Assembly: GCA_002269645.1 (NCBI GenBank)
Contig: NIVC01004653.1
Coordinates: forward strand, 1 to 39,253
Length of the DNA stretch: 39,253 nt
From: Macrostomum lignano
Taxonomy: Eukaryota
Direction of reading: 5' to 3'
Of this stretch, positions 1 to 39,253 are shown one piece after another (positions within the stretch are counted from its first letter, which is position 1; the number at the start of each line of letters is the position of its first letter). The notes under the pieces were generated by a model. It saw nothing but the letters and a program-made list of their open reading frames with translations. It was not told the DNA's origin and made no database searches. The translations under genes were made by a program, and so were the position numbers.

Positions 1-1
1 G

Positions 2-284
2 TGCGACTTCGGTTTTGCTAAACAGCTGCGGGCGGAACGGCCTCCTGATGACGCCGTGCTATACAGCCTCCTTTCGTGGCTCCTGCGAGGTGCTCAAACT
101 GCAGGGCTACTCAAAAGCCTGCGACGTCTGGAGCGCCGGGGTGCTGTTGTACACCATGCTGGCCGGCCGCACTCCGTTCGCCCACGGGCCCAACGACCCG
201 TCCGAAGAGATTCTGAGCCGAATCGAGTCCGGGACCGTTGTTCTCGATGGCGGCAACTGGGACTCGGTGTCCGCGCACGCCAAG
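2..284 (+). CDS. RPS6KA: p90 ribosomal S6 kinase (RSK), penultimate coding exon (C-terminal kinase domain, subdomains VII-X); 5' truncated by window edge and carrying small indels
   Basis: Reads [12 protein letters not shown][82 protein letters not shown]. This matches the RSK C-terminal kinase domain as recalled ([36 protein letters not shown]...). Ends at phase-0 donor AAG|GTGAGC (285). Confidence 0.93.
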
Positions 285-304
285 GTGAGCTGAGGCTTCG
301 ATTG

Positions 305-920: not shown

Positions 921-1060
921 TTGATTGTTGCATTAGCAATCAAAGTGTTGATGATTGTTGCATTAGCAATCAAAGTGTTGTTGATTGTTGCATTAGCAAT
1001 CAAACTGTTGTTGATTGTTGCATTAGCAATCAAACTGTTGTTGATTGTTGCATTAGCAAT
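921..1060. repeat. 30-bp tandem repeat (TTGATTGTTGCATTAGCAATCAAAGTGTTG), ~5 copies
   Basis: Units start at 921, 951, 981, 1011 and 1041; the array ends ~19 nt before the 3' splice site. Confidence 0.9.
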
Positions 1061-1079
1061 TTTCCAACCAATCCGGCAG

Positions 1080-1349
1080 GACTTGGTCCGCCGCATGCTG
1101 CTGGTGGATCCAACCCAGCGCGTCACCGCTGCGCAGGCGCTGCAGCACACTTGGGTGGCCAGCCGGGCGGTGCTGCCGCTGTACCGGCTGGCGGTGCACC
1201 AGGAGGCCGGCCAGATGCGCGGCGCCATGCGAGCAACATTCGCCGCGGTGAACAAGCCGCCGCCCTTGCCGGCCCTGCAGAGCGTGGCGGCATCGGGGCT
1301 GGCAAAGCGACGCGGCAAGCAGCTGCTGAAGGTGTCCACTGAGGTCTGA
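1080..1349 (+). CDS. RPS6KA: p90 RSK terminal coding exon
   Basis: Phase-0 acceptor CGGCAG|GAC at 1079/1080. Encodes DLVRRMLLVDPTQRVTAAQALQHTWV...GAMRATFAAVNKPPPLPALQSVAASGLAKRRGKQLLKVSTEV-stop (TGA 1347-1349). Matches the RSK ending (DLVSKMLHVDPHQR...GAMAATY...LAQRR...STxL). Confidence 0.95.
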   Translation, partial: DLVRRMLLVDPTQRVTAAQALQHTWVASRAVLPLYRLAVHQEAGQMRGAMRATFAAVNKPPPLPALQSVAASGLAKRRGKQLLKVSTEV

Positions 1350-4070: not shown

Positions 4071-4418
4071 TCACGTGTTGCTGAAATTCACGTAGGCATT
4101 CTCCGAGCTCACCTTGTAGCTCTCGCTGGCGCCGCCGGTTCCGCTGGCGCCGCCTCCGCTGGCGCCGAAGAATCGCTCCCGGTAGCGGCTGGGCCGGTGC
4201 TCAATCAGCCAGGCGCCCAGGCGGCTTCCCGGATGTCGGAAGCCGTACAGCAGGACGCCGGCCACTGTGGCGACCGCAGCCAGCGCAAGGATGCCCAGGC
4301 AGACGCCGAGTGCCACCTGACCGGCGCTGCGCCTGCTGGCTGCCTCTGGCGGCTGCTTCGTGCCGGTGCGACCGAGCGGCACAATGCTGCGGTCGCCGTC
4401 ACCGCAGGTTCCGCCGGC
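4071..4418 (-). CDS. PLXDC: PLXDC coding exon 11 (TM helix and cytoplasmic tail)
   Basis: CCGCAG|AGGTCGDG...[45 protein letters not shown]...NAYVNFSNT-stop; equivalent to PLXDC2 [22 protein letters not shown]. Confidence 0.95.
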   Translation of the reverse strand, partial: AGGTCGDGDRSIVPLGRTGTKQPPEAASRRSAGQVALGVCLGILALAAVATVAGVLLYGFRHPGSRLGAWLIEHRPSRYRERFFGASGGGASGTGGASESYKVSSENAYVNFSNT

Positions 4419-7400
4419 CTGCGGTTCATGGTGTCAGTGATGAATTTATTTGTGTCAGTGATGAATTGATTTGTGTCAGTGATGAATTGATGTGTGTCAG
4501 TGATGAATTGATGTGTGTCAGTGATGAATTGATGTGTGTTGGTGACTCAGTGATGAATTGATTTGTGTCAGTGATGAATTGATGTGTGTTGGTGACTCAG
4601 TGATGAATTGATTTGTGTCAGTGATGAATTGATGTGTGTTGGTGACTCAGTGATGAATTGATTTGTGTCAGTGATGAATTGATGTGTGTTGGTGACTCAG
4701 TGATGAATTGATTTGTGTCAGTGATGAATTGATGTGTGTTGGTGACTCAGTGATGAATTGATTTGTGTCAGTGATGAATTGATGTGTGTTGGTGACTCAG
4801 TGATGAATTGATTTGTGTCAGTGATGAATTGATGTGTGTTGGTGACTCAGTGATGAATTGATTTGTGTCAGTGATGAATTGATGTGTGTTGGTGACTCAG
4901 TGATGAATTTATTTGTGTCAGTGATGAATTGATTTGTGACAGTGATGAACTGATTTGTGTCAGCGATAGATAGATTGTGTCAGTGATAGATAGATAGTGT
5001 TAGCGATAGATAGATTGTGTCAGTGATAGATAGATTGTGTCAGTGATAGATAGATAGTGTCAGCGATAGATGGATTGTGTCAGCGATAGATAGATAGATT
5101 GTGTCAGCAATAGATAGATAGATTGTATCAGCGATAGATAGATTGTGTCAGTGATAGATAGATAGATTGTGTCAGCGATAGATAGATTTTGTCAGCGATA
5201 GATAGATAGTGTCAGTGATAGATAGATTGTGTCAGTGATAGATAGATTGTGTCAGCGATAGATAGATTGTGTCAGCGATAGATAGATAGATTGTGTCAGT
5301 GATAGATAGATTGTGTCAGCGATAGATAGATTGTGTCAGTGTTAGATAGATTGTGTCAGCGATAGATAGATTGTGTCAGCGATAGATAGATAGATTGTGT
5401 CAGTGATAGATAGATTGTGTCAGCGATAGATAGATTGTGTCAGCGATAGATAGATAGATTGTGTCAGTGATAGATAGATAGTGTCAGCGATAGATTTTGT
5501 CAGCGATAGATAGATTGTGTCAGCGATAGATAGATTGTGTCAGTGATGAACTGATTTGTGTCAGCGATAGATAGATTGTGTCAGTGATAGATAGATAGTG
5601 TTAGCGATAGATAGATTGTGTCAGTGATAGATAGATTGTGTCAGTGATAGATAGATAGTGTCAGCGATAGATGGATTGTGTCAGCGATAGATAGATAGAT
5701 TGTGTCAGCGATAGATAGATTGTGTCAGTGATAGATAGATAGATTGTGTCAGCGATAGATAGATTGTGTCAGTGATAGATAGATTGTGTCAGTGATAGAT
5801 AGATTGTGTCAGCGATAGATAGATAGATTGTGTCAGCGATAGATGGATTGTGTCAGTGATGAACTGATTTGTGTCAGCGACAAATAGAATGTGTCAGCGA
5901 TAGATAGATAGTGTCAGCGATAGATGGATTGTGTCAGCGATAGATAGATAGATTGTGTCAGCGATAGATAGATAGATTGTGTCAGCGATAGATAGATAGA
6001 TTGTGTCAGCGATAGATAGATAGATAGTGTCAGCGATAGATGGATTGTGTCAGCGATAGATAGATAGATTGTGTCAGCGATAGATAGATAGATTGTGTCA
6101 GCGATAGATAGATTGTGTCAGTGATAGATAGATAGTGTCAGCGATAGATAGATTGTGTCAGCGATAGATAGATTGTGTCAGCGATAGATAGATGGATTGT
6201 GTCAGCGATAGATGGATTGTGTCAGCGATAGATAGATAGATTGTGTCAGCGATAGATAGATAGATTGCGTCAGCGATAGATGGATTGTGTCAGACAGAAA
6301 CAAATCACAAAAACAGCAGCCCAATATCAATATTAGCTTTGGCTAAAGTGGCATGCAGAGCTGACGGGCGGCAAGGCAAACACATTCCGGCTGGTGAGAA
6401 ACTGATGGATTTAACAATCGAGCACTCTGTATGATTTGCAGTTGCAACAACTGCAAGGCAATAAAATGAAGGCTGTTAAGAAACGATAAAAAGTTGATAA
6501 AAATGCTACTTAAAAGTGAAAGCAGTTCTGTGAAAATGAAACGCTTAAATAAGTGAAAGAAAGTGAATTATTGATTTGTGTTTTATTGTTGCCGTACACA
6601 GTCGTGGTCCACGACGACCACATCGACAGTGGTGGCCTCCGTGGCCTGGGTGCTGCGTTCGCGAGTAGTAGTAGTAGCAGTAGTAGCAGCGGTAGTAGTA
6701 GTTTCAACCCTACGAGTTGTGATGTCCTTCCAGCAGAGCCTTGTGAACTGAGATTACACGCGTTTGTGTTGCCCAGTCAGAACTCTATTAGCTACTTATT
6801 ACTGAGGAACTTCTCTGATGCTGGCGCGATAAAAAGTTTTGGTTTGCAATAGCAAATTCTACAGATTGTATCAATTGTAAGTTGGTCAGCTTGATTTACA
6901 TGAGGTAGAAGGGAAAAGTTTTAAAAATTAGATATGGGAGTGGGATACGGGAAGTGAGATATGGGAATTGAGATACGGGAAGTGAGATATGGGAAGTGAG
7001 ATACGGGAAGTGAGATATGGGAATTGAGATACGGGAAGTGAGATATGGGAAGTGAGATACGGGAAGTGAGATATGGGAATTGAGATACGGGAAGTGAGAT
7101 ATGGGAAGTGAGATACGGGAAGTGAGATATGGGAAGTGAGATATGAGAAGTGAGATACGGGAAGTGAGATATGGGAAGTGAGATACGGGAAGTGAGATAC
7201 GGGAAGTGAGATATGGGAAGTGAGATACGGGAAGTGAGATATGAGAAGTGAGATACGGGAAGTGAGATATGAGAAGTGAGATACGGGAAGTGAGATATGA
7301 GAAGTGAGATACGGGAAGTGAGATATGAGAAGTGAGATACAGGAAGTGAGATATGAGAAGTGAGATACGGGAAGTGAGATACGGGAAGTGAGATATGAGA

Positions 7401-10400
7401 AGTGAGATATGGCAAGTGAGATATGGGAAGTGCGATACGGGAAGCGAGATATGAGAAGTGAGATACGGGAAGTGAGATACGGGAAGTGAGATATGAGAAG
7501 TGAGATATGGGAAGTGAGAGATGGGAAGTGAGATACGGGAAGTGAGATATGGGAAGTGCGATACGGGAAGCGAGATATGAGAAGTGAGAGATGGGAAGTG
7601 AGATACGGGAAGTGAGATATGGGAAGTGCGATACGGGAAGCGAGATACGGGAAGTGAGATTTGGGATGTGAGATACGGGAAGTGAGATATGAGAAGTGAG
7701 ATATGGGAAGTGAGATATGGGAAGTGAGAGATGGGAAGTGCGATACGGGAAGCGAGATACGGGAAGTGAGATATGGGATGTGAGATACGGGAAGTGAGAT
7801 ATGAGAAGTGAGATACGGGAAGTGAGATATGAGAAGTGAGATATGGGAAGTGAGATACGGGAAGTGAGATACGGGAAGTGAGATATGGGAAGTGAGATAC
7901 GGGAAGTGAGATATGGGAAGTGAGATATGGGAAGTGAGATATGGGAAGTGAGATATGGGAAGTGAGATATTAGAAGTGAGAGATGGTAAGTTTAAAAAGC
8001 CAACAGAGCCACTATGTAAATTAAAACACTCACCAAAACTGTCAATCTTTTGACCCAAATAAAAACAATAAACAGACTGCAAAACCAGCATAACCCAAAC
8101 TCACCGAATAGTGGCACTCGGAGTCGTGCCAGTCCTGTAGCCGACGGTCGACCCCGGAGCTGCAGCGGCCCAGATCGTAGCACCAGCTGCAGTTGAAGGC
8201 GGGGACTCGCGACCGGTCAGTGCAGTTGGAGCAGCTGGTCTGCTGGTTGCAGGCTGGGAATTGTGGGAGTGGAGAAGCTATTTGTTATATGATTGCTTTC
8301 TTGGGATAAATTTGTGTACAGCTAACCACAGCTCAAATTTAGTCTCAATGTGATCTTAATGTCACCCCAATGTGATCTTAATGTCACCCCAATGTGATTT
8401 TAATGTCACCCCAATGTGATCTTAATGTCAGTCCCTATGTGATCTTAATGTCAGTCTGAATGTGATCTTAATGTCAGTCTCAATGTGATCTTAATGTCAC
8501 CCCAATGTGATCTTAATGTCAGTCCCTATGTGATCTTAATGTCAGTCTGAATGTGATCTTAATGCCCGTCTCAATGTCATCTTAATGTCACCCTAATGTG
8601 ATCTTAATGTCAGTCCCTATGTGATCTTAATTCCAGTCTCAATGTCATCTTAATGTCACCCCAATGTCATCTTAATGTCAGTCTGAATGTGATCTTAATG
8701 CCCGTCTCAATGTCATCTTAATGTCAGTCTGAATGTGATCTTAATGTCAGTCTAAATTTGATCTTAATGTTAGTCTGAATGTGATCTTAATATCAGTCTG
8801 AATGTGATCTTAATGTCAGTCTGAATGTGATCTTAATGTTAGTCTGAATGTGATCTTAATGTTAGTCTGAATGTGATCTTAATGTCAGTCTGAATGTGAT
8901 CTTAATGTTAGTCTGAATGTGATCTTAATGTCAGTCTGAATGTGATCTTAATGTTAGTCTGAATGTGATCTTAATATCAGTCTGAATGTGATCTTAATGT
9001 TAGTCTGAATGTGATCTTAATGTCAGTCTGAATGTGATCTTAATGTCAGTCTGAATGTGATCTTAATGTCAGTCTCAATGTGATCTTAATGTCACCCCAA
9101 TGTGATCTTAATGTCAGTCCCTATGTGATCTTAATGTCAGTCTGAATGTGATCTTAATGTCAGTCTGAATGTGATCTTAATTTAGTCTTAACCCAAGATA
9201 CCATTGAGTAAACCTAATTAAAGTCACCTCATCGTCACCTAGTCATGGTTACGAACTCGCACTAAAATAACAACACAAGTGCAGCGCCACTTACTCGGCT
9301 GGTGCACCAGATGGATTATGCCGTCTGTGACAATTTGATCCCGTGGCACTCGCAGCTCGTGGTATCTCACAATCTTGCGCAACACGGTGCCTGAGGAAAC
9401 AACTAATAAATTTAGAATGATGAATTATTTGACTGGTTAGTGCGTAAATTAGTGAAGATTTATAGATAGATTGACACGTATCTGGCAAACAAGATAATAA
9501 ATTACAAGTCTAATAGATTAAAAGCAAAGTAGATAGTGGTGCAGTCAATCAGTTAGTTAAATAATGTTATTTATTACATGGTAAAGCGAAGGCTAAATTA
9601 AGTTAATTAGAATATACAGAGCAGTTATTAATTTTATATTATACACGCAGAGAAATAGCTTGTACAGGTTTCAGAAATAGTTGCTCAGCTCAAGACAGTA
9701 AGATAATAAGTTGATTAAGGTACAAGGAGCTAGTTTAAACAGGTAACACACCGAATAGCCTATCGAACCTTCAGTAACAGGTTGTCTGAATACCCCATCA
9801 AACCTTCAGTAACAGGTTGTCTGAATACCCCATCAAACCTTCAGTAACAAGTTGGCTGAATACCCCATCAAACCTTCAGTAACAAGTTGTCTGAATACCG
9901 AACCAAACCTTCAGTAAGGGTAGCCTGAATACCCCATCAAACCTTCAGTAACAAGTTGTCTGAATACCCCATCAAACCTTCAGTAACAAGTTGTCTGAAT
10001 ACCGAACCAAACCTTCAGTAAGGGTAGCCTGAATACCCCATCAAACCTTCAGTAAAAAGTTGTCTGAATACCCCATCAAACCGTCAGTAACAAGTTGTCT
10101 GAATACCCCATCAAACCTTCAGTAACAAGTTGTCTGAATACCCCATCAAACCTTCAGTAACAAGTTGTCTGAATACCGAACCAAACCTTCAGTAAGGGTA
10201 GCCTGAATACCCCATCAAACCTTCAGTAACAAGTTGTCTGAATACCCCATCAAACCTTCAGTAACAAGTTGTCTGAATACCGAACCAAACCTTCAGTAAG
10301 GGTAGCCTGAATACCCCATCAAACCTTCAGTAACAAGTTGTCTGAATACCTCATCAAACCTTCAGTAACAAGTTGTCTGAATACCCCATCAAACCTTCAG

Positions 10401-13400
10401 TAACAAGTTGTCTGAATACCCCATCAAACCTTCAGTAACAAGTTGTCTGAATACCCCATCAAACCGTCAGTAACAAGTTGTCTGAATACCCCATCAAACC
10501 TTCAGTAACAAGTTGTCTGAATACCCCATCAAACCTTCAGTAACAAGTTGTCTGAATACCCCACCAAACCTTCAGTAAGGGTAGCCTGAATACCCCATCA
10601 AACCTTCAGTAACAAGTTGTCTGAATAACCCATCAAACCTTCAGTAAGGGTAGCCTGAATACCCCATCAAACCTTCAGTAACAAGTTGTCTGAATACCCC
10701 ATCAAACCGTCAGTAACAAGTTGTCTGAATACCCCATCAAACCTTCAGTAACAAGTTGTCTGAATACCCCACCAAACCTTCAGTAAGGGTAGCCTGAATA
10801 CCCCATCAAACCTTCAGCAAACTACAATTCTTTATTGAATTGTCAAATTTTAATAAGAGTACGGAACCTGGCAACTAGGATTGCATTGAGCAAGGTCAAA
10901 ATACAGGCCCTAGCAATGGTTTTTCTTACCTATCCCAGGAGCTTTCACTTCATAGTAAAAGGCATCTGACAGTCCAATTTTCAGCATAGACGAGGCTGAC
11001 CTCAAGGCTTCCATGGTGATTGGGATCTGAATTAGTCAGTAGGAATCGATTACTATTATTAATCAATTTTAAGGCTAAACAAACCAGCACAACTATCAAG
11101 TCCGATGGCTCACCTTAATGTAGTCGAAGACGATAGATCCGTTTGAGAATATGGCGCATTGAAAGGAAAAGGTGCCCACTGTAACAGAGTTCAGAATTTT
11201 GCGCTAGGTGAGTATTATATAAATAGATTTAAGTACAATGTTTAAATGGATTCTGTGGTCTAATTTGACAAACTATACACAGAAAGTATCTTGTAAAGCG
11301 TGAACAGACAAGATTGAAGGAGTGTCAGTGACCTGAAGTGAGAACAGACAAGATTGAAGAGTGTCAGTGACCTGAAGTGAGAACAGACAAGATTGAAGAG
11401 TGTCAGTGACCTGAAGTGAGAACAGACAAGATTGAGTGTCAGTAACCTGAAGTGAGAACAGACAAGATTCAGTGTCAGTGACCTGAAGTGAGAACAGACA
11501 AGATTGAGTGTCAGTGACCTGAAGTGAGAAAAGACAAGATTGAAGGAGTGTCAGTGACCTGAAGTGAGAACAGACAAGATTGAAGAGTGTCAGTGACCTG
11601 AAGTGAGAACAGACAAGATTGGGCGTCAGTGACCTGAAGTGAGAACAGACAAGATTGGGCGTCAGTGACCTGAAGTGAGAACAGACAAGATTGGGTGTCT
11701 ATATGCAAAGCACAAGATCAAGAGACCATTTCAGCCCCTCATTACAACAGCAGTCAGAGAGAACTTACAAGAATAGTTTGAGCTCACAAACAGATTCTCC
11801 CAGCGCACCCAGAAGGCGTCCTCAGCTTCGACATACTTGATAGCGGACACCGACTTCCTGGTCTCGAAGTCGGCCATCATTGGCGCAATGTATTGCGAGA
11901 AAGTCAAGTAAGGATGCGTCAGATCGTTTACGTAGATGAACCCTGCGTGTTGGGGATTGGGCGTGCAACTTTTGATTATTTTTGTTTGATTTATTTCTAT
12001 TTTCAGACAAAAAAGCGCACAAAGCTTGATTAAATAATAATAATAGCTGATTACACCTGCCCTGACGGCCAGATGAGCAACCGACAGCTCAGCCGCAGCT
12101 ATTGCGCGGCGCATCTGAAGGCTGCGTACGGCTGTTCAGTCCAAGGACTGGGGGGTCGCCACACACACCCTCAATTACCCCAGCTAATGCTGGCACCCAT
12201 TTTACAGCTGGGTGAACTGAAGCAATGCAGATCGTTAAGTGTTTTGCTCAAGGACACAAACTGTTCCGAGTGGGATCGGGAATCGAACCCCCGACCTTCA
12301 AGTCGTGAGTCCGACGCTCACATTAAACAGGGCTGATTAAACAGGTATCAGCAGGTTGATAGATTAAATAAATAAATAGCACAGCCCAGCGACTCAGTGG
12401 CAATAAAATCAGGCACTAACAATGCGAGGACTACACATACGTATCCGACTGTATATCTATCGCATGAATTATTGCTCAACCCTGAGCTAAAACCAATTGG
12501 AAAGAGTCGGAATGTCAGGACAGGTGGGTGCACTGTTCAGAAAAAAACATTTATGGCAAAACCTGGGACCGCGAAGGGGAGGAAGAGCTGTTACAACAGA
12601 ATGGGGAGCTGCGTACTCCACGCATGTATTCCCAAGCCAGCCAGCCATGCGCAGAGCTGCATCAGTGCAGCTCCCAACAAGCGAGACAATAGTACAGCCT
12701 TTTCCTTACAGAGGCTGCTACGTTTTTAAGTCCTACGGGGAAAAGCAAACACAATGCGTTGTCATGGCAACCAGTGCCACGCCAGCCTCACCGCTAGTGG
12801 TAAGCACAATCGACTTGACTGAATGGCCGTAGAAGTCGAACGAAAAAACCAGTGGAATTGTCTGAAATACGAGTATTAGCGGCGGGTTTATAGGGTGGCC
12901 GGGTCACTCGGTGCATAGTAGAACCTATTTACCGCACAACTGATTTCCCAACGCAAGACAAAGCTCGAGGTCGAAAAGACCCAAGACTTACCAATGCCAG
13001 ATTTTTTCCATTGTTCAATTTAATATTGGAGCGAATCGAATAAGCTGAGAAGATTCGATCAAACTCGCTGGAATAGTACGTGCTCATGGGGTGACTCTTT
13101 GCTATAATCATATTGTAGTACACATGGTTATCCTGCAATTGTGTTTTTAGGATAATCTGTTGTACGACTTGCATTCGTGATAATAGCTCGTATAGTAGTC
13201 ATAACTATTTAAACTTAACTTTGCCGTCACGCTGTCCATGCATGCTAAAGTGTGTCTGTCGCCCCAAGGTCATTTAATTCTAGCTAACTTTTCAGTCACG
13301 CTGTCCATGCGTGCTAAAGTGAGGCTGCAGCCTTCAAGGTCATTTAATTCTAGCTAACTTTTCAGTCACGCTGTCCATGCGTGCTAAAGTGAGGCTGCAG

Positions 13401-24051: not shown

Positions 24052-27000
24052 GGGGAGAGTGACACACAGGGAGAGTGACACACAGGGAGAGTGAGATACT
24101 GGGAGAGTGAGACAGAGGGAGAGTGAGACATAGGGAGAGTGAGACACAGGGAGAGTGAGACACAGGGAGAGTGAGACACAGGGAGAGTGAGACACAGGGA
24201 GAGTGAGACACAGGGAGAGTGAGACACAGGGAGAGTGAGACACAGGGTGAGTGAGACACAGGGAGAGTGAGATACTGGGAGAGTGAGACACAGGGAGAGT
24301 GAGATACTGGAGAGTGACACACAGGGAGATTGACACACTGGGAGAGTGAGATACTGGGGGAGTGAGACACAGGGAGAGTGAGACACAGGGAGAGTGAGAT
24401 ACTGGGAGAGTGAGACAGAGGGAGAGTGAGACATAGGGAGAGTGAGACACAGGGAGAGTGAGACACAGGGAGAGTGAGACACAGGGAGAGTGAGACACAG
24501 GGAGAGTGAGACACAGGGAGAGTGAGACACAGGGAGAGTGAGACACAGGGTGAGTGAGACACAGGGAGAGTGAGATACTGGAGAGTGAGACACAGGGAGA
24601 GTGAGATACTGGAGAGTGACACACAGGGAGATTGACACACTGGGAGAGTGAGATACTGGGGGAGTGAGACACAGGGAGAGTGAGACACAGGGAGAGTGAG
24701 ATACTGGGAGAGTGAGACACAGGGAGAGTGAGATACTGGAGAGTGACACACAGGGAGATTGACACACTGGGAGAGTGAGATACTGGGGGAGTGAGACACA
24801 GGGAGAGTGAGACACAGGGAGAGTGAGACACAGGGAGAGTGAAATACAGGGAGAGTGAGACACAGGGAGAGTGAGATACTGGAGAGTGACACACAGGGAG
24901 AGTGACACACAGGGAGAGTGACACACTGGGAGAGTGAGATACTGGGAGAGTGAGACACAGGGAGAGTGAGACACAGGGAGAGTGAGACACAGGGAGAGTG
25001 AGACACAGGGAGAGTGACACACAGGGAGAGTGAGACACAGGGAGAGTAAGGCACAGGGAGAGTGAGACACAGGGAGAGTGAGACACAGGGAGAGTGAGAC
25101 ACAGGGAGAGTAAGATACTGGGAGAGTAAGGCACAGAGAGAGTAAGTCACAGGGAGAGTGAGACACAGGGAGAGTGAGACACAGGGAGAGTGAGACACAG
25201 GGAGAGTGAGACACAGGGAGAGTGAGACACAGGGAGAGTGAGACACAGGGAGAGTGAGACACAGGGAGAGTGAGACACAGGGAGAGTAAGGCACAGGGAG
25301 AGTGAGACACAGGGAGAGTGAGACACAGGGAGAGTGAGACACAGGGAGAGTGAGACACAGGGAGAGTGAGGCACAGGGAGAGTGAGACACAGGGAGAGTG
25401 AGACACAGGGAGAGTGAGACACAGGGAGAGTGAGACACAGGGAGAGTGAGACACAGGGAGAGTGAGACACAGGGAGAGTGAGACACAGGGAGAGTAAGAT
25501 ACTGGGAGAGTAAGGCACAGGGAGAGTAAGGCACAGGGAGAGTGAGACACAGGGAGAGTGAGACACAGGGAGAGTGAGACACAGGGAGAGTGAGACACAG
25601 GGAGAGTGAGACACATGGAGAGTGAGACACAGGGAGAGTGACACACAGGGAGAGTGACACACAGGGAGAGTGACACACAGGGAGAGTGAGACACAGGGAG
25701 AGTGAAACACAGGGAGAGTGAGATACTGGGAGAGTGAGACACAGGGAGAGTGACACACAGGGAGAGTGAGACACAGGGAGAGTGAGACACAGGGAGAGTG
25801 AGACACAGGGAGAGTGAGATACAGGGAGATTGAGACACAGGGAGAGTGAGACACAGGGAGAGTGAGACACAGGGAGAGTGAGACACAGGGAGAATGAGAT
25901 ACTGGGAGAGTGAGACACAGGGAGAATGAGACACAGGGAGAGTGAGACACAGGGAGAGTGAGACACAGGGAGAGTGAGACACAGGGAGAGTGAGACACAG
26001 GGAGAGTGAGACACAGGGAGAGTGAGATACTGGGAGAGTGAGACACAGGGAGAGTGAGACACAGGGAGAGTGAGATACTGGGAGAGTAAGACACAGGGAG
26101 AGTGAGATACTGGGAGAGTGAGACACAGGGAGAGTGAGACACAGGGAGAGTGACACACAGGGAGAGTGAGACACAGGGAGAGTGACACACAGGGAGAGTG
26201 AGACACAGGGAGAGTGAGATACAGGGAGATTGAGACACAGGGAGAGTGAGACACAGGGAGAGTGAGACACAGGGAGAGTGAGACACAGGGAGAGTGAGAT
26301 ACTGGGAGAGTGAGACACAGGGAGATTGAGACACAGGGAGAGTGAGACACAGGGAGAGTGAGACACAGGGAGAGTGAGACACAGGGAGAGTGAGACACAG
26401 GGAGAGTGAGACACAGGGAGAGTGAGATACTGGGAGAGTGAGACACAGGGAGAGTGAGACACAGGGAGAGTGAGACACAGGGAGAGTGAGACACAGGGAG
26501 AGTGAGACACAGGGAGAGTAAGATACTGGGAGAGTAAGGCACAGGGAGAGTGAGACACAGGGAGAGTGAGACACAGGGAGAGTGAGACACAGGGAGAGTG
26601 AGACACAGGGAGAGTGAGATACTGGGAGAGTGAGACACAGGGAGATTGAGACACAGGGAGAGTGAGACACAGGGAGAGTGAGACACAGGGAGAGTGAGAC
26701 ACAGGGAGAGTGAGACACAGGGAGAGTGAGACACAGGGAGAGTGAGACACAGGGAGAGTGAGACACAGGGAGAGTGACACACAGGGAGAGTGAGACACAG
26801 GGAGAGTGACACACAGGGAGAGTGAGACACAGGGAGAGTGAGATACAGGGAGATTGAGACACAGGGAGAGTGAGACACAGGGAGAGTGAGACACAGGGAG
26901 AGTGAGACACAGGGAGAGTGAGATACTGGGAGAGTGAGACACAGGGAGATTGAGACACAGGGAGAGTGAGACACAGGGAGAGTGAGACACAGGGAGAGTG

Positions 27001-27199
27001 AGACACAGGGAGAGTGAGACACAGGGAGAGTGAGACACAGGGAGAGTGAGATACTGGGAGAGTGAGACACAGGGAGAGTGAGACACAGGGAGAGTGAGAC
27101 ACAGGGAGAGTGAGACACAGGGAGAGTGAGACACAGGGAGAGTAAGATACTGGGAGAGTAAGGCACAGGGAGAGTGAGACACAGGGAGAGTGAGACACA
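24052..27199. repeat. 16-bp minisatellite GGGAGAGTGAGACACA, ~3.1 kb
   Basis: About 195 copies; explains the 683-1111 aa VSHSPCVSLSLCLTLP ORFs. Confidence 0.97.
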
Positions 27200-27599
27200 A
27201 TGAGAGTTACTCGTAGAAAAGATTCTGGATAGGAATGACAGGTATTTCACCATCCCATGAGTCAAGCGGAAAGTCATGTCTCCTTTAAGGCGAATCGAGC
27301 GAAAACAGAGTACCAAGAAAAGCATCGTCACTCTCCTACAGTGTGGATCTAGCCAATTAAATAAACAAGTGTTAGCTTCTTAGTAAAGCTCCCTAGCATT
27401 GGCAGAACAGTTTATTTCAAAACGGCTATCCACAACCAGTTATCAACAGTTGCTTATCGCGACTTTTCGACACCCTGCGCCGGTTAACATCAAAGCTGTC
27501 GGAGAGGGGGATTTCGAATAGTTGGGTGGGAGAAAGAGGAAAATAGTTAGGAGACAAGAGCAATGTAGATAGAGGCAGAGAAAGAGAGGGAGATGAGAG

Positions 27600-31530: not shown

Positions 31531-32474
31531 TTAGTGATTTTTTATCATTTAAATCTTACAGCAAATTTTAAGTCAGTTGAGAAGCTCGCAGACAGCTCTA
31601 AGTGAACAGAGACTGTGCAGCAAAACAAAAGACCCTTGCAGAAATTTTTTCAGGGCGAGATTGGAATGCGTGAATCTTTGGTGGCCGCAAATGTTTGCTC
31701 TTCGTGACCCGACCGGCTGAAGGGTCCCGGATGTGTCCCAGCAAATGTGAGGGCATCCCGGTGCAGGTCCCTGCAGAGCGGGGAAGACGACAGCTGAAAG
31801 CCATTCTCCGAGTCAACAATGCCTCGTATCTGGGTAGAACTTTTCTGCTTCAACAAAACAATCTTTTAACAACGCTTGAGCTCTCAGGCAAGCGAGCTCT
31901 GGAATCAGGCAGCTTCCCAGAAGCCTCGCTGCTACACCCCCCGCTGCCCAGCTTCCCAAACTGGGAGTCTATAGGTGAGCAGTGTGTGTGTGTGTGTAAG
32001 TGTGTGGAAAGTTCTCACTCTCAGTGCTAAATTGCTAGATAGACTAAAAGCGGGAACAATGGCCTCAGCAATGCTGAGTGACGCGTGTTACCCCAGCCTG
32101 GCCCTGTGTGTTATTTCCCACTTTCCCATTTCAGATAATGGGGAGCCTTGCCACCCAGCCTCACTCCTCATCAACTGTCAGGGTCTGGCCGGGACTCCGC
32201 ATCCACCCTCCCCCCTCTCTCTCTTCCCTCTCTTTCATTCTTACTTGCGAAAAATTTTCTTCTGCTTTTTGCGGGTGCCATTGGCAACAAATTCTTCTCA
32301 CCCCATCGATTTTCGCATCGCCTTGAACTGTATGAGGTTGAGCAGAATCTGTCTGGCCCAGCCTTGCCAGAGGGAGCGGGGGAATTCCGCTTTCTTATTA
32401 TTAAGGCTCCCCATCCTTGGCCGTTGTTTTGTTGCGACTGGACCCTGCGAAGGTTCCAAAATTTCTGTAGATAC

Positions 32475-32929
32475 CGAAGGTCCCGGAGGTCCCGAAGGTC
32501 CCGAAATTCCCGAAGTTCTCGAAGGTCTCGAAGGTCCCGAAGGTCCCGAAGGTCCCGAAGGTCCCGAAGGTCCCGAAGGTCCCGAAGGTCCCGAAGGTCC
32601 CGAAGGTCCCGAAGGTCCCGAAGGTCCCAAAGGTCCCGAAGGTCCCAAAGGTCCCGAAGGTCCCGAAGGTCCCGAAGGTCCCGAAGGTCCGAAGGTCCGA
32701 AGGTCCCGAAGGTCCCGAAGGTCCCGAAGGTCCCGAAGGTCCCGAAGGTCCCGAAGGTCCCGAAGGTCCCGAAGGTCCCGAAGGTCCCGAAGGTCCCGAA
32801 GGTCCCGAAGGTCCCGAAGGTCCCGAAGGTCCCGAAGGTCCCGAAGGTCCCGAAGGTCCCGAAGGTCCCGAAGGTCCCGAAGGTCCCGAAGGTCCCGAAG
32901 GTCCCGAAGGTCCCGAAGGTCCCGAAGGT
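32475..32929. repeat. 9-bp minisatellite GAAGGTCCC
   Basis: About 50 copies, nearly invariant, with two 8-bp units near 32690-32700. Confidence 0.96.
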
Positions 32930-33381
32930 TTAGTCTGGCATTTCAACCACAGAACAGCATTCTGTGTAAGTTCTGTGATTTCAACTGCCAACATATCTAT
33001 TCAACCAGCAAAGCAGCTGTCCCGGAAGCCACAGTCACACGGTAACCAAGCGTAAACCGCACTATATGTCTATATTATCGACTTGAATCTCCCTTAATTT
33101 GATTCATGAATTTGTTCACCAAACCAGAAACTTTCGGCCCCAATATTATCTCACACACCTTGGCCGCCGCGCAGCTGGGCAAATGCAATATAGACACGGC
33201 TGTAGTTCAGCATTCAAGACACAAACTACATATGGGATTAAATCCCCTTACCCTCCCTCAGTCACGGTCTGTTAATCTTCCTTACTTCTCTCCCCTCCTA
33301 CCTTCCTTTTTCCTTCCCCTTACCTTCCTGTCCTGGCACTTGGTTTCTGCCCCTTCTCCTCTCTCTCTCTACACACACATT

Positions 33382-33398
33382 GGTTGCCCTCGGCAACC
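33382..33398. promoter_or_regulatory. Palindromic RFX X-box GGTTGCC-CTC-GGCAACC
   Basis: Fits the X-box consensus GTNRCC(N0-3)RGYAAC with perfect arms; ~340 nt upstream of mir-87. Confidence 0.45.
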
Positions 33399-33602
33399 GA
33401 ACGACAGTGGAGAGGCGTCAGGTCAGCCCTGGCCCAGTCGCGGGGCTGCATGGCTTAGAAGGATTGGAATCCCCCTCTCATCCCTCCAGGCCAGTGGGGA
33501 GCAGCTCAGCGGCTTACAGTCAGGCAGATAAATTGCGGCAACCATGGCTGGCCCCCCAATCATTTTACCCACTCCCCGGCCCAGCTGAATTTCAACTTTC
33601 AG

Positions 33603-33666
33603 TTTGCCTCACGAGTTTTAGAAGCTTCCGTAAGCAGCGGCAGCAGCAGCGGCTACGGCAAAACTG
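33603..33666 (+). other. Candidate small exon of the mir-87 host transcript
   Basis: Consensus donor CTG|GTAAGT at 33667-33672; in-frame acceptors TTTCAG (33602) or TTTTAG (33621); reads (FASRVL)EASVSSGSSSGYGKT. Confidence 0.35.
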
Positions 33667-33722
33667 GTAAGTTCCTGTCCGGCCTAAAGTCCCAAATTTT
33701 AATCCCAAGCCTGAAACTCGAA

Positions 33723-33843
33723 CTCCTGACCACAAGCCGCCTGAACTTTTGTCTCAAACCGCAGAAGCAAAGAGAAATTGCTTTTATTTGCTAAAAGAAA
33801 GCGATGATTCGGTGAGCAAAATTTCAGGTTGCAAGCAGTCAGA
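33723..33843 (+). ncRNA. mir-87: microRNA mir-87 family precursor
   Basis: 3p arm GUGAGCAAAAUUUCAGGUUGC (33812-33832; seed UGAGCAA; compare recalled miR-87 GUGAGCAAAGUUUCAGGUGUG and UUGAGCAAAAUUUCAGGUGUG). 5p arm CGCCUGAACUUUUGUCUCAAACC (33738-33760; compare recalled star CGCCUGAUACUUUCGUCUCAACC). The arms pair with 2-nt 3' overhangs; basal stem CUGAC 33726-33730 with GUCAG 33838-33842. Confidence 0.88.
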
Positions 33844-34050
33844 GCAAGCCAAGGTTGTATTAACCCCCGATCTGCATGCTTTTTTCTCTTTATGATCTCA
33901 CGCTGTTTAATTAACACTATGGGAGCTTGCTCTCAATACGTATTTTTCATGGCCAGGCAGGACTTTTCCAACTTCTTTCCTCACATCCTTCCATCACTAC
34001 TCTTATTTGTACTCTCTTGGTTCAATACTTGTTTTTCCCTCTCACATCAT

Positions 34051-34670
34051 TCTCTCATCTCGCCCTCTCATCTCACCCTCTCATCTCGCCCTCTAATCTC
34101 ACCCTCTCATCTCGCCCTCTCATCTCACCCTCTCATCTCACCCTCTCATCTCGCCCTCTCATCTCACCCTCTAATCTCGTTCTCTTATCTCGCCCTCTCA
34201 TCTCACCCTCTTATCTCACCCTCTCATCTCACCCTCTCATCTAGTTCTCTTATCTCGCCTCTCATCTCACCCTCTCATCTCACCCTCTCATCTCACCCTC
34301 TCATCTCACCCTCTCATCTAGTTCTCTTATCTCGCCCTCTCATCTCACCCTCTCATCTCGCCCTCTCATCTCACCCTCTCATCTCACCCTCTCATCTCGC
34401 TCTCTCTCATCTCACCCTCTCACTTCACCCTCTCATCTCGCCCTCTCATCTCGCCCTCTAATCTCGCCCTCTCATCTCACCCTCTCATCTCACCCTCTCA
34501 TCTCGCTCTCTCTCATCTCACCCTCTCACTTCACCCTCTCATCTCGCCCTCTCATCTCGCCCTCTAATCTCGCCCTCTCATCTCGCCCTCTAATCTCGCC
34601 CTCTCATCTCACCCTCTCATCTCATCCTCTCATCTCACTCTTTCATCACACCCTCTCATCTCACTCTTTT
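34051..34670. repeat. 13-bp minisatellite CTCTCATCTC(A/G)CC
   Basis: About 45 copies. Confidence 0.93.
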
Positions 34671-36457: not shown

Positions 36458-38792
36458 CTTGGCACCTCAGCAATTCCCTCTTGATCATTGGCACCTCAGC
36501 ATTCCCCCCATTGATCACTGGCACCTCAGCATTCCCCCATTGATCATTGGCACCTCAGCATTCCCCCATTGATCATTGGCACCTCAGCATTCCCCATGTA
36601 TTATTGGCACCTCAGCATTCCCCCATTGATCATTGGCACCTCAGCATTCCCCATTGATCATTGGCACCTCAGCATTCCCTCATTGATCATTGGCACCTCA
36701 GCATTCCCCCATGTATCATTGGCACCTCAGCATTCCCCATGTATCATTGGCACCTCAGCATTCCCCATGTATCATTGGCACCTCAGCATTCCCCCCCATT
36801 GATCATTGGCACCTCTGAATTCCCCCATGTATCATTGGCACCTCAGCATTCCCCATTGATCATTGGCACCTCAGAATTCCCTCTTGATCATTGGCACCTC
36901 AGCATTCCCTCTTGATCATTGGCACCTCAGCATTCCCCCATCCATGTATCATTGGCACCTCAGAATTCCCTCTTGATCATTGGCACCTCAGCATTCCCCA
37001 TTGATCACTGGCACCTCAGCATTCCCCATTGATCATTGGCACCTCAGTATTCCCTCTTGATCATTGGCACCTCAGCATTCCCCATTGATAATTGGCACCT
37101 CAGCATTCCCCATTGATCATTGGCACCTCAGCATTCCCTCTTGATCATTGGCACCTCAGCATTCCCCATTGATAATTGGCACCTCAGAATTCCCTCTTGA
37201 TCATTGGCACCTCAGCATTCCCTCTTGATCATTGGCACCTCAGCATTCCCCCCATGTATCATTGGCACCTCAGCATTCCCCCATGTATCATTGGCACTTC
37301 AGCATTCCCCCATGTATCATTGGCACCTCAGCATTCCCCCCATTGATCATTAGCACCTCAGTATTCCCCCATTGATCATTGGCACCTCTGAATTCCCCCA
37401 TGTATCATTGGCACCTCAGCATTCCCCATTGATCATTGGCACCTCAGCATTCCCCCATGTATTATTGGCACCTCAGCATTCCCCCCATGTATCATTGGCA
37501 CCTCAGCATTCCCCCATGTATCATTGGCACCTCAGCATTCCCCCATGTGTCATTGGCACCTCAGCATTCCCCCCATTGATCATTGGCACCTCAGTATTCC
37601 CCCATTGATCATTGGCACCTCTGAATTCCCCCATGTATCATTGGCACCTCAGCATTCCCCATTGATCATTGGCACCTCAGAATTCCCTCTTGATCATTGG
37701 CACCTCAGCATTCCCTCTTGATCATTGGCACCTCAGCATTCCCCCATCCATGTATCATTGGCACCTCAGAATTCCCTCTTGATCATTGGCACCTCAGCAT
37801 TCCCCATTGATCACTGGCACCTCAGCATTCCCCATTGATCATTGGCACCTCAGTATTCCCTCTTGATCATTGGCACCTCAGCATTCCCCATTGATAATTG
37901 GCACCTCAGAATTCCCTCTTGATCATTGGCACCTCAGCATTCCCTCTTGATCATTGGCACCTCAGCATTCCCCCCATGTATCATTGGCACCTCAGATTCC
38001 CCTTGATCATTGGCACCTCAGCATTCCCCATTGATCATGGCACCTCAGCATTCCCCATTGATCATTGGCACCTCAGTATTCCCTTGATCATTGGCACCTC
38101 AGCATTCCCCATTGATATTGGCACCTCAGCATTCCTCTTGATCATTGGCACCTCAGCATTCCTCTTGATCATTGGCACCTCAGCATTCCCCCCATGTATC
38201 ATTGGCACCTCAGCATTCCCCATGTATCATTGGCACCTCAGCATTCCCCCATGTATCATTGGCACCTCAGCATTCCCCCCATTATCATTGGCACCTCATT
38301 CCCCCATGTATCATTGGCACCTCAGCATTCCCCATTGATCATTGGCACCTCAGCATTCCCCATGTATTATTGGCACCTCAGCATTCCCCCATGTATCATT
38401 GGCACCTCAGATTCCCCATTGATCATTGGCACCTCAGCATTCCCCATGTATCATTGGCACCTCAGCATTCCCCCATTGATCATGGCACCTCAGATTCCCC
38501 TTGATCATTGGCACCTCAGCATTCCCCATTAATCATGGCACCTCAGATTCCCCCATTGATCATGGCACCTCAGCATTCCCCATTGATCACTGGCACCTCA
38601 GCATTCCCCATTGATCATTGGCACCTCAGCATTCCCCTTGATCATGGCACCTCAGCATTCCCATTGATCATGGCACCTCAGCATTCCCTTGATCATTGGC
38701 ACCTCAGCATTCCCCATTGATCACTGGCACCTCAGCATTCCCATTGATCATTGGCACCTCAGCATTCCCCCATTGATCACTGGCACCTCAGT
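36458..38792. repeat. ~27-30 bp minisatellite ATTGGCACCTCAGCATTCCCC(ATTGATC/ATGTATC/TCTTGATC), ~2.3 kb
   Basis: About 80 copies; variable C-run; block duplications (the CTCTGAATTC variant recurs near 36815, 37386 and 37620). Confidence 0.96.
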
Positions 38793-39253
38793 ATTTCTTC
38801 TTGAGTGCGTCTGAGAAGCCGAAGCAGTTATAGCTGTGTTATAATATCTAAACCAGCATGCAAAATCACGTGCAGTTTTGTAAGAAATTACGTGACTGAA
38901 AATGCATTCAAACATCAATTTCTGTAAGCAACACTATCGCAGACAAACTCGCCACTCTAATGACATTTGTATGCGCAAGCAAAGAATGTTGATTGCTACG
39001 CTTCATTTAGCAAGAGTTGAGTAGAGATCACAGCGCAGCTAGATTGGTGTAAAAATAGGCGTGCCATGGAGTGGCTTGCAGTAGCTTTCAAGCCAGACAA
39101 TGGCTGTCTTCATAAACTAGTTGAGCAGGTCTCACTCAATGCAATCTAGCAGTGCGGCTCTAGTGGCTTGCGCCAGCCTCTCACTTCTATTAAGCCATCT
39201 ATTTGGAAAGATGCTCTAAAAGCTTCATGCTGTTGAGAGGCTGCCGAGTAGCA

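What the first reader, a model, noticed from the sequence alone, without database searches (positions are those of the whole stretch)
33723..33843. Hidden mir-87 family microRNA gene
It is not visible in the ORF track. Both mature and star arms match the mir-87 family as recalled, they pair with the expected bulges and 2-nt overhangs, and there is a basal stem. The mature 3' end (…CAGGUUGC) differs from the usual …CAGGUGUG, so it may be a lineage-specific paralogue. mir-87 is a protostome family, which also places the organism. It is often found in tandem pairs, but I found no second copy in this window.
Basis: partly seen in the sequence, partly recalled or inferred. Interest (0 to 1): 0.75.

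Follow-up and report, generated by a model that had tools for sequence, protein, structure and literature searches.

The report
Divergent long-loop mir-87 microRNA hairpin
The flagged 120 bases really do form a hairpin whose two arms both match the well-known invertebrate microRNA family mir-87, so this is an ordinary conserved microRNA gene with an unusually long loop and a slightly altered tail, not a new kind of element.

Summary
Window 33723-33844 (+) folds into one hairpin, and 33736-33761 pairs with 33810-33832 in every context folded. The 3' arm carries GUGAGCAAAAUUUCAGGU, with the miR-87 seed UGAGCAA at 33813-33819.

Rfam mir-87 (RF00726) is the best of 4227 families over the whole window: 36.8 bits, E 1.8e-4. 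That is below the gathering score of 49.

I built a covariance model from 27 independent mir-87 hairpins taken from metagenome contigs, without the window. It scores the locus at 45.4 bits, the antisense strand at 19.4, and nothing else in the window above 14. Unrelated hairpins holding the same 18-mer score 33.4 or less.

A profile of the family's 5' (star) arms alone finds 33738-33761 as its best hit (18.1 bits). The plain complement of the 3' arm scores 11.1. The window also shares the family's bulges and central mismatch.

What differs: A at mature position 10, a 3' end of UUGC re-paired by changes on the 5' arm, a 95-nt precursor with a 48-nt structured loop, a weak basal stem, and no tandem partner.

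Long mir-87 hairpins are documented in flatworms. Expression is untested and the organism is unidentified.

Verdict: a new member of a known family, of low interest.

The parts
33723..33844 (+). The whole pri-miRNA hairpin: basal stem, miRNA duplex and apical domain.
   Evidence: MFE structure. Covariance-model matches at 33731-33838 (Rfam) and 33731-33839 (R2).
33723..33737 (+). 5' side of the basal stem. It is weak: 10 bp interrupted by two 2x2 internal loops and a bulge.
   Evidence: Pair table. In the R2 alignment, 5 of the 8 lowest model pairs are non-canonical.
33738..33761 (+). Predicted 5p (star) arm, CGCCUGAACUUUUGUCUCAAACCG. It has bulged U33752 and A33756-A33757 and two C.U mismatches (33738, 33746).
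   Evidence: Best hit in the window of a 5'-arm profile built from 27 other mir-87 hairpins: 18.1 bits, E 9.6e-5. The complement of the 3' arm scores 11.1 bits. It shares the 14-mer TTTTGTCTCAAACC with L037.
33762..33809 (+). 48-nt apical domain that folds into two small stem-loops (about 33763-33785 and 33788-33804).
   Evidence: It is treated as a 38-nt (Rfam) or 48-nt (R2) insertion relative to the family models. It is unique in the window.
33812..33832 (+). Predicted mature 3p miRNA, GUGAGCAAAAUUUCAGGUUGC. The seed UGAGCAA lies at 33813-33819.
   Evidence: Exact 18-mer match. 3'-arm profile hit at 33811-33829, E 6.7e-4. The seed is as listed for miR-87-3p in PMC4326209. Published matures: gugagcaaaguuucagguguau (PMC7328434) and GUGAGCAAAGUUUCAGGUGU (PMC6895134).
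33833..33844 (+). 3' side of the basal stem.
   Evidence: Pair table.

Best explanation
Window 33723-33844 (+) is a gene for a microRNA of the mir-87 family.

Inferred mechanism: the transcript folds into a hairpin. Drosha/Pasha would cut near 33738/33832 and release a 95-nt precursor. Dicer would cut near 33761/33812. The 3' arm, GUGAGCAAAAUUUCAGGUUGC, would load into Argonaute and repress mRNAs complementary to the seed UGAGCAA.

Shown here: homology of both arms, the fold and the strand. Inferred: the cut sites, the choice of arm and expression itself.

This copy is a divergent, apparently solitary member. It has A at position 10, a re-paired 3' end and a long structured apical domain.
For: **Family models.**
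- Rfam RF00726 is the top hit of 4227 families over the whole window: 36.8 bits, E 1.8e-4. The only other hit has E 0.4.
- Model R2 was built from 27 mir-87 hairpins of metagenome contigs and not trained on the window. It scores 33731-33839 (+) at 45.4 bits, the antisense strand at 19.4, and the next best site in the window at 14.
- Hairpins that merely contain the same 18-mer score 33.4 or less: L029, L019, L006.
- Untrained long-loop homologues L022, L053 and L091 score 44.

**The star arm carries family features beyond complementarity.**
- A profile of the 5' arms alone has its best window hit at 33738-33761, E 9.6e-5. That is 7 bits above the reverse complement of the 3' arm.
- The U bulge and the AA bulge sit where they do in L002, L037 and L015.
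- The central C.U mismatch falls in a column where 10 of 27 family members are also unpaired.

**The changes preserve structure (alignment, my reading).**
- Position 10 A pairs with U33747. The family has C-G or U-G there.
- At the altered 3' end, G33736-C33832 and C33737-G33831 replace the consensus C-G and G-U pairs.

**The stem is stable.** All 21 pairs are in the MFE in 136- to 750-nt contexts, with pair probability 0.94 up to 450 nt.

**Long hairpins are compatible with abundant expression in this family.** Echinococcus mir-87 is 94 nt (PMC4326209). Gyrodactylus miR-87 has a long hairpin and more than 300,000 reads (PMC3840308).

**Rfam's threshold is strict for this family.** 5 of 19 bona fide metagenome copies also fall below the gathering score, at 33.6-48.7 bits.
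Against: - There are no expression data and no orthologous locus, so processing is unproven.
- The Rfam score is below the gathering threshold (36.8 against 49).
- R2 scores the window below every training member (49.6-80 bits). The antisense strand of one strong member reaches 41 bits.
- Fold stability is only moderate (z -2.39), and the antisense strand folds better (-46.9 kcal/mol, z -3.47).
- The basal stem is interrupted.
- I saw no CNNC 16-18 nt downstream of the 3' cut and no UG at -14. This is my own reading, and the importance of these motifs in this unknown lineage is uncertain.
- The exact mature sequence appears in no searchable paper.
- An RSK exon 33 kb away carries frame-breaking indels. 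Either the assembly has indel errors or this region harbours decaying copies.
Confidence: 0.75

Rival explanations
1. A relic or non-processed copy. The hairpin descends from a mir-87 gene, but it has acquired a 48-nt loop insertion, a changed 3' end and a degraded basal stem, and the Microprocessor no longer cuts it efficiently.
For: - It scores below the Rfam gathering threshold and below all training members of R2.
- The basal stem is interrupted: 5 of the 8 lowest model pairs are non-canonical.
- The z-score is modest.
- It is solitary, whereas the family is usually a tandem pair.
- It lies in DNA that is about 50% minisatellite.
- An RSK exon in the same window has frame-breaking indels.
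Against: - Seventeen of the first 18 mature nucleotides and the whole seed are intact.
- The star arm keeps the family-specific bulges.
- The changes at position 10 and at the 3' end keep pairing.
- All 20 upper-stem model pairs but one family-typical mismatch are canonical.
- Precursors of 94 nt or more are abundantly expressed in flatworm mir-87.
- Hairpins with 110-160-nt apical domains keep conserved arms in L022 and L091.
Confidence: 0.18
2. The functional strand is the minus strand: an antisense miRNA from the same hairpin.
For: The minus strand folds more stably (-46.9 kcal/mol, z -3.47, 0 of 200 shuffles as good). It still resembles the family weakly, at 20 bits in Rfam and 19.4 bits in R2.
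Against: The sense strand scores 17-26 bits higher in both models. The conserved seed UGAGCAA and the family bulge pattern exist only on the + strand. Antisense strands of undoubted mir-87 hairpins reach 29-41 bits simply through hairpin symmetry.
Confidence: 0.03
3. A chance hairpin or repeat-derived inverted repeat that happens to contain the miR-87 18-mer, like the plant MITE-like hairpins L029, L006 and L086.
For: Such decoys exist. 47 distinct hairpin-forming stretches hold the 18-mer, and I set 9 of them aside as non-family when choosing the training set. L029 reaches 31-33 bits.
Against: - The window scores 12 bits above the best decoy in R2.
- Its 5' arm is not the simple complement of the 3' arm but matches the family's star arm.
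- The locus is single-copy in the window and is not part of any repeat family.
Confidence: 0.02

Closest known systems
mir-87 microRNA precursor family (Rfam RF00726; miR-87-3p, seed UGAGCAA, classed as of protostome origin in PMC4326209)
   Same: - The mature product is on the 3' arm.
- Nucleotides 1-9 and 11-18 are identical to published miR-87.
- The star arm is GCCUGAA..UUUUGUCUCAAACC, with the same U and AA bulges and a central mismatch.
- The match covers the full length of the model (1-79 of 79).
   Different: - A instead of G at position 10. The Rfam consensus is lower-case there, so the position varies in the seed alignment. From memory, Drosophila miR-87 also has A.
- The 3' end is UUGC instead of GUGU/GUAU/GCGU.
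- The apical domain is 48 nt, against 13-42 nt in the 27 comparison hairpins.
- The score is below the gathering threshold.
- There is no tandem partner within 33 kb upstream or 5.4 kb downstream.
Long-hairpin mir-87 of flatworms (Echinococcus canadensis mir-87, 94 nt, PMC4326209; Gyrodactylus salaris miR-87, PMC3840308)
   Same: The precursor is unusually long: 95 nt from cut to cut here, 94 nt in Echinococcus. Those long hairpins are abundantly expressed, so the length does not argue against function.
   Different: Echinococcus miR-87-3p is GUGAGCAAAGUUUCAGGUGU, with G10 and the canonical end. Whether the window comes from a flatworm is unknown.
mir-87-like hairpins with very long apical domains in metagenome contigs L022, L053 and L091
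   Same: The arms are family-like and separated by a long, structured insertion. R2 scores are similar (44 bits against 45.4).
   Different: Their apical domains are 110-160 nt and GC-rich (0.57-0.62). Their mature sequence is canonical (G10...GGUGUAU). No sequence similarity to the window exists outside the arms.
Tandem mir-87 pairs (mir-87a/b) of most protostomes (PMC3763532). Eight metagenome loci hold two exact 18-mer matches (L011, L015, L030, L039, L050, L061, L069, L077; also L066, which duplicates the L030 hairpins); L037 is a ninth pair whose second copy has a variant mature.
   Same: The second copies of such pairs are also divergent and often fall below the Rfam threshold (33.6-48.7 bits), as the window copy does.
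   Different: Pair spacing is 176-945 nt, or 2.2 kb in L037. No partner is detectable here. PMC3763532 reports that Drosophila also keeps a single copy.

Membership tests
mir-87 (Rfam RF00726) | Score at or above the curated Rfam gathering threshold (49 bits). | tested here: not met
   36.8 bits, with no hit at gathering level. The E-value is still significant: 1.8e-4 for the whole window against all 4227 families. Five of 19 undoubted copies from metagenomes also fall below 49.
mir-87 (Rfam RF00726) | Mature 3p sequence with seed UGAGCAA and extended identity to GUGAGCAAAGUUUCAGGUGU. | tested here: met
   The seed is exact at 33813-33819. Seventeen of the first 18 nucleotides are identical, with G10A the exception. 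Nucleotides 19-21 differ.
mir-87 (Rfam RF00726) | The 5' (star) arm is homologous to the family's, not merely complementary to the 3' arm. | tested here: met
   The arm-only nhmmer profile gives 18.1 bits, E 9.6e-5, at 33738-33761. The perfect complement scores 11.1 bits. The U bulge, AA bulge and central mismatch are shared.
mir-87 (Rfam RF00726) | A single hairpin with the mature sequence in a duplex of about 22 bp, 2-nt 3' overhangs and a basal stem of about 11 bp. | tested here: inconclusive
   The duplex and the overhang geometry fit if the cuts are at the family positions. The basal stem has 10 bp, but two internal loops and a bulge interrupt it. The loop is 48 nt.
mir-87 (Rfam RF00726) | Expression: small-RNA reads from both arms with homogeneous 5' ends (the MirGeneDB criterion). 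| not testable with these tools
   No small-RNA data are available and the organism is unidentified.
mir-87 (Rfam RF00726) | The locus is conserved in related species, with arms conserved more than the loop. | not testable with these tools
   No orthologous locus could be retrieved. ORFs next to the hairpin are not on record, and no metagenome locus resembles the flanks.
mir-87 (Rfam RF00726) | The host is a protostome animal. | tested here: inconclusive
   The RSK exon's best named hit is a Schistosoma mattheei fragment at 65% identity. The search index is sparse, and the last exon found nothing. The long hairpin resembles flatworm mir-87. Neither point is decisive.
Tandem mir-87a/b cluster | A second mir-87 hairpin within about 0.2-2 kb on the same strand. 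| tested here: not met
   R2 run with filters off over the whole window: the next best hit is 14 bits, E 0.04, on the other strand. Rfam finds no second hit at E 1 or below.

The most novel reading that the evidence does not exclude
The source organism might not be a protostome. I could not establish its identity. This locus would then put mir-87 outside the clade to which the family is assigned and move its origin deeper.

A milder version: the 48-nt structured apical domain and the re-paired 3' end mark a lineage-specific, separately regulated mir-87 paralogue.
Probability: 0.04. Interest if true: 0.55.

Novelty: new member of a known kind. Interest (0 to 1): 0.2.

Why it matters
It matters little beyond annotation. 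It adds one conserved miRNA gene to an otherwise gene-poor, minisatellite-filled stretch and gives a phylogenetic hint (protostome, possibly flatworm-like) about the source genome.

It is a useful example of a real family member that the curated Rfam threshold and default hairpin-length settings would miss because of a long apical domain. The flatworm miRNA literature has already noted that problem.

Tried and rejected
**Searches that found nothing or too little**
- Rfam at gathering thresholds: no hit. The permissive search was needed to see the locus.
- Literature search for the exact mature sequence (18- and 19-mers, as RNA and as DNA): 0 papers.
- Retrieving the source or an orthologous locus through ORFs beside the hairpin (33106-33531 +, 33699-33917 -): not on record.
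- Identifying the organism from the RSK exons. The penultimate exon gave only fragmentary hits of 67% identity or less (contigs are uninformative). The last exon gave no hit.
- Pfam on 10 ORFs from non-repeat parts: only a PSI domain at 8045-8284 (-). Nothing was found for the ORF over the hairpin.

**Models and repeat checks**
- The first covariance model (R1) used the RNAalifold consensus and kept only 12 pairs, so I discarded it in favour of R2 with a hand-set 28-pair structure. That structure is 80.6% paired, against 31-49% for slid controls.
- The repeat finder does not report the hairpin as an inverted repeat, because the bulges break its ungapped extension.
- Repeat or MITE origin is rejected: the locus is unique in the window.

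**Alternative readings considered**
- A tRNA is ruled out: none is found in the window.
- Protein-coding: the only test was Pfam on the stop-to-stop ORF 33459-33791, which covers the 5' arm and part of the loop but not the mature arm; it found nothing. The other ORFs over the hairpin were not scanned.
- Mirtron: a GTAAGT lies at 33668 upstream, but the hairpin has its own basal stem and is not flush with any splice site. This is my reading.

Full report
**1. The observation**

The window is eukaryotic DNA. About half of it is minisatellite arrays. It has no tRNA and no Rfam hit at gathering thresholds.

RNAfold of 33715-33850 on the + strand gives one long hairpin at -38.3 kcal/mol, z -2.39, with 5 of 200 shuffles folding as well.

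The pair table joins 33736-33761 to 33810-33832. The features of that stem are:
- C.U mismatches at 33738/33830 and 33746/33822;
- a bulged U33752 and a bulged A33756-A33757;
- a 48-nt apical domain (33762-33809) that forms two small stem-loops.

All 21 stem pairs stay in the MFE structure when 250, 450 or 750 nt are folded. Mean pair probability is 0.94 up to 450 nt.

Both ends of the duplex then have 2-nt 3' overhangs. The precursor would be 95 nt long.

The basal stem is real but poor. It has ten pairs broken by two 2x2 internal loops and a bulge.

**2. Is it mir-87?**

*Rfam.* A permissive Rfam search of the whole window, both strands, all 4227 families, puts RF00726 (mir-87) first at 33731-33838 (+). 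The score is 36.8 bits, E 1.8e-4, over the full model length. The only other hit has E 0.4 and lies in a satellite. The antisense strand scores 20 bits. The gathering score is 49, so by Rfam's curated rule this is not a member.

*Calibrating that score.* I scanned the metagenome collection for GTGAGCAAARTTTCAGGT and obtained 94 loci.
- About 40 distinct ones are clear mir-87 hairpins. Among the listed loci, eight hold two exact 18-mer matches 176-945 nt apart, and L037 has a second copy 2.2 kb away with a variant mature, found only by Rfam.
- Nineteen of them score 33.6-65.6 bits with Rfam. Five fall below 49; three are the lower-scoring copy of an exact-match pair and a fourth is the L037 copy that holds the 18-mer.
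- A plant MITE-like hairpin that merely contains the 18-mer (L029) scores 31.2.

*An independent model.* I built covariance model R2 from 27 of these hairpins, without the window. Its hand-set 28-pair structure is 80.6% paired, against 31-49% when the partners are slid.
- With filters off, R2 gives 45.4 bits at 33731-33839 (+), 19.4 bits for the antisense strand, and at most 14 bits anywhere else in the window.
- Decoy hairpins with the same 18-mer score 33.4 or less.
- Training members score 49.6-80.
- Three untrained long-loop homologues (L022, L053, L091) score 44.
- The antisense strand of one strong member reaches 41.

The window therefore sits at the low edge of the real family and clearly above unrelated hairpins. 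Its 26-bit sense/antisense gap fixes the strand.

*The star arm.* This is the most telling test. An nhmmer profile of the 5' arms of the 27 hairpins has its best hit in all 78.5 kb of both strands at 33738-33761 (+), at 18.1 bits, E 9.6e-5. The reverse complement of the window's own 3' arm is what a generic hairpin would carry, and it scores only 11.1 bits. The 3'-arm profile hits 33811-33829 with E 6.7e-4.

The extra 7 bits come from features that pairing alone does not require:
- the bulged U in UUUUG-U-CUC and the AA bulge before ACC, at the same places as in L002, L015 and L037;
- a 14-mer, TTTTGTCTCAAACC, identical to L037;
- the central C.U mismatch, which falls in a column where 10 of 27 members are also unpaired.

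*Published sequences.* Published miR-87-3p sequences are gugagcaaaguuucagguguau for Biomphalaria (bgl-miR-87b), which one search shows matching cte-miR-87b with 0 mismatches (PMC7328434), and GUGAGCAAAGUUUCAGGUGU for Echinococcus (PMC6895134). The seed UGAGCAA is listed under Protostomia in PMC4326209.

**3. What is different**

- **Position 10 is A, not G.** Among the hairpins I treat as bona fide mir-87 copies, all have G there, although the search pattern allowed A. The Rfam consensus is lower-case at that position. From memory only, Drosophila miR-87 has A.
- **Nucleotides 19-21 are UGC.** Rfam models this as a one-base gap; R2 models it as substitutions.
- **Pairing is kept in both cases.** A33821 pairs with U33747, where the family has C-G or U-G. 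G33736-C33832 and C33737-G33831 replace the consensus C-G and G-U pairs. That pattern is expected of a hairpin still under structural constraint, not of a sequencing slip.
- **The apical domain is 48 nt.** The comparison set has 13-42 nt. This is not disqualifying:
  - L077 and L030 carry loops of 31-42 nt;
  - L022 and L091 carry 110-160-nt structured apical domains between conserved arms;
  - the literature reports 'particularly long hairpins' for abundantly expressed mir-87 in Echinococcus (94 nt; PMC4326209) and in Gyrodactylus (more than 300,000 reads; PMC3840308).
- **No tandem partner.** PMC3763532 says the family is a two-copy cluster in most animals and a single copy in Drosophila.

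**4. Surroundings**

The hairpin is single-copy within the window and belongs to no repeat family. It sits between a 9-bp satellite (32474-32929) and a 13-bp satellite (34037-34664). One of the ORFs that cross the hairpin (33459-33791) was scanned and has no Pfam match.

A GTAAGT at 33668 after a Ser/Gly-rich ORF could be a splice donor, which would make the miRNA intronic. I could not test this.

The only recognisable genes are far away:
- the 3' end of an RSK-like kinase on the + strand (1-290 and 1060-1349);
- a PSI-domain ORF on the - strand (8045-8284).

The RSK penultimate exon has a frame change and two small insertions that destroy the APE motif, when compared with four homologues. Either the assembly has indel errors or that copy is decaying. 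This is a caution for reading single-base details of the hairpin.

**5. The organism**

It remains unidentified. The RSK exon's best hits are 65-67% identical fragments, including one from Schistosoma mattheei, but the index returned only short fragments. The last exon found nothing.

The 'protostome' placement therefore rests on the family's published distribution. The flatworm-like hairpin length is only a hint.

**6. Verdict**

Homology to mir-87 is well supported; I put it at about 0.93. Whether it is a live, processed gene is likely but unproven. The overall confidence of 0.75 covers both.

The main rival is a poorly processed relic copy (0.18). An antisense miRNA and a chance or repeat-derived hairpin are unlikely.

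This is a new member of one of the best-known protostome miRNA families, with a long apical domain already known from flatworm members. Interest is low, at 0.2.

Noticed in passing
window 1-290 and 1060-1349 (+): This is the 3' end of an RSK/p90 ribosomal S6 kinase-like gene. [12 protein letters not shown] is in frame 2 (2-37). [11 protein letters not shown]...AHAK is in frame 3 (36-287), followed by a GTGAGC donor. An intact last exon ends ...KQLLKVSTEV* near 1347.

The penultimate exon has a frame change at about 37 and +1 and +2 insertions at about 75 and 86. These turn the invariant NFVAPEVLK into [10 protein letters not shown] when compared with four homologues. It is either a pseudogene copy or assembly indels.
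   Followed up: partly
window 8045-8284 (-) and 4074-4433 (-): An ORF with a Pfam PSI (plexin repeat) domain (E 6.4e-5, just above the cutoff). A downstream ORF on the same strand has a hydrophobic, transmembrane-like stretch. Together they may be exons of a small PSI-domain membrane protein.
   Followed up: partly
whole window, e.g. 24053-27207, 36459-38795, 4431-6293, 9753-10817: About 19.5 kb of the 39.3 kb is minisatellite arrays in 27 blocks, with units of 9-104 nt and up to 197 copies. Strand composition skews are strong (GC skew up to +0.58 and down to -0.69).
   Followed up: no
L022 1534-1750, L053 62-278, L091 1238-1404: Metagenome contigs carry mir-87-like hairpins whose conserved arms are separated by 110-160 nt of GC-rich, highly structured apical sequence (z -6.5 for L022). 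This is an extreme form of the long-loop trait seen in the window.
   Followed up: partly
L029 516-795, L006, L086: Moss-associated metagenome contigs hold the same 18-mer, GTGAGCAAAATTTCAGGT, inside long near-perfect inverted repeats. L029 weakly matches the plant families MIR7533 and MIR7504; L006 returned no Rfam hit and L086 was not scanned, and I group them with L029 only by sequence resemblance. They served as decoys.
   Followed up: partly
L005 539-825 (+): A metagenome contig picked up only because it contains the 21-mer GTGAGCAAAATTTCAGGTTGC by chance. It matches Rfam 5_ureB_sRNA above the gathering score (69.6 bits against 40).
   Followed up: no
window 33633-33673 (+): A Ser/Gly-rich ORF ends at ...AAAACTG|GTAAGT, a consensus-like 5' splice site 55 nt upstream of the hairpin base. 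The miRNA might therefore be intronic. No homologue was found for the putative exon.
   Followed up: no
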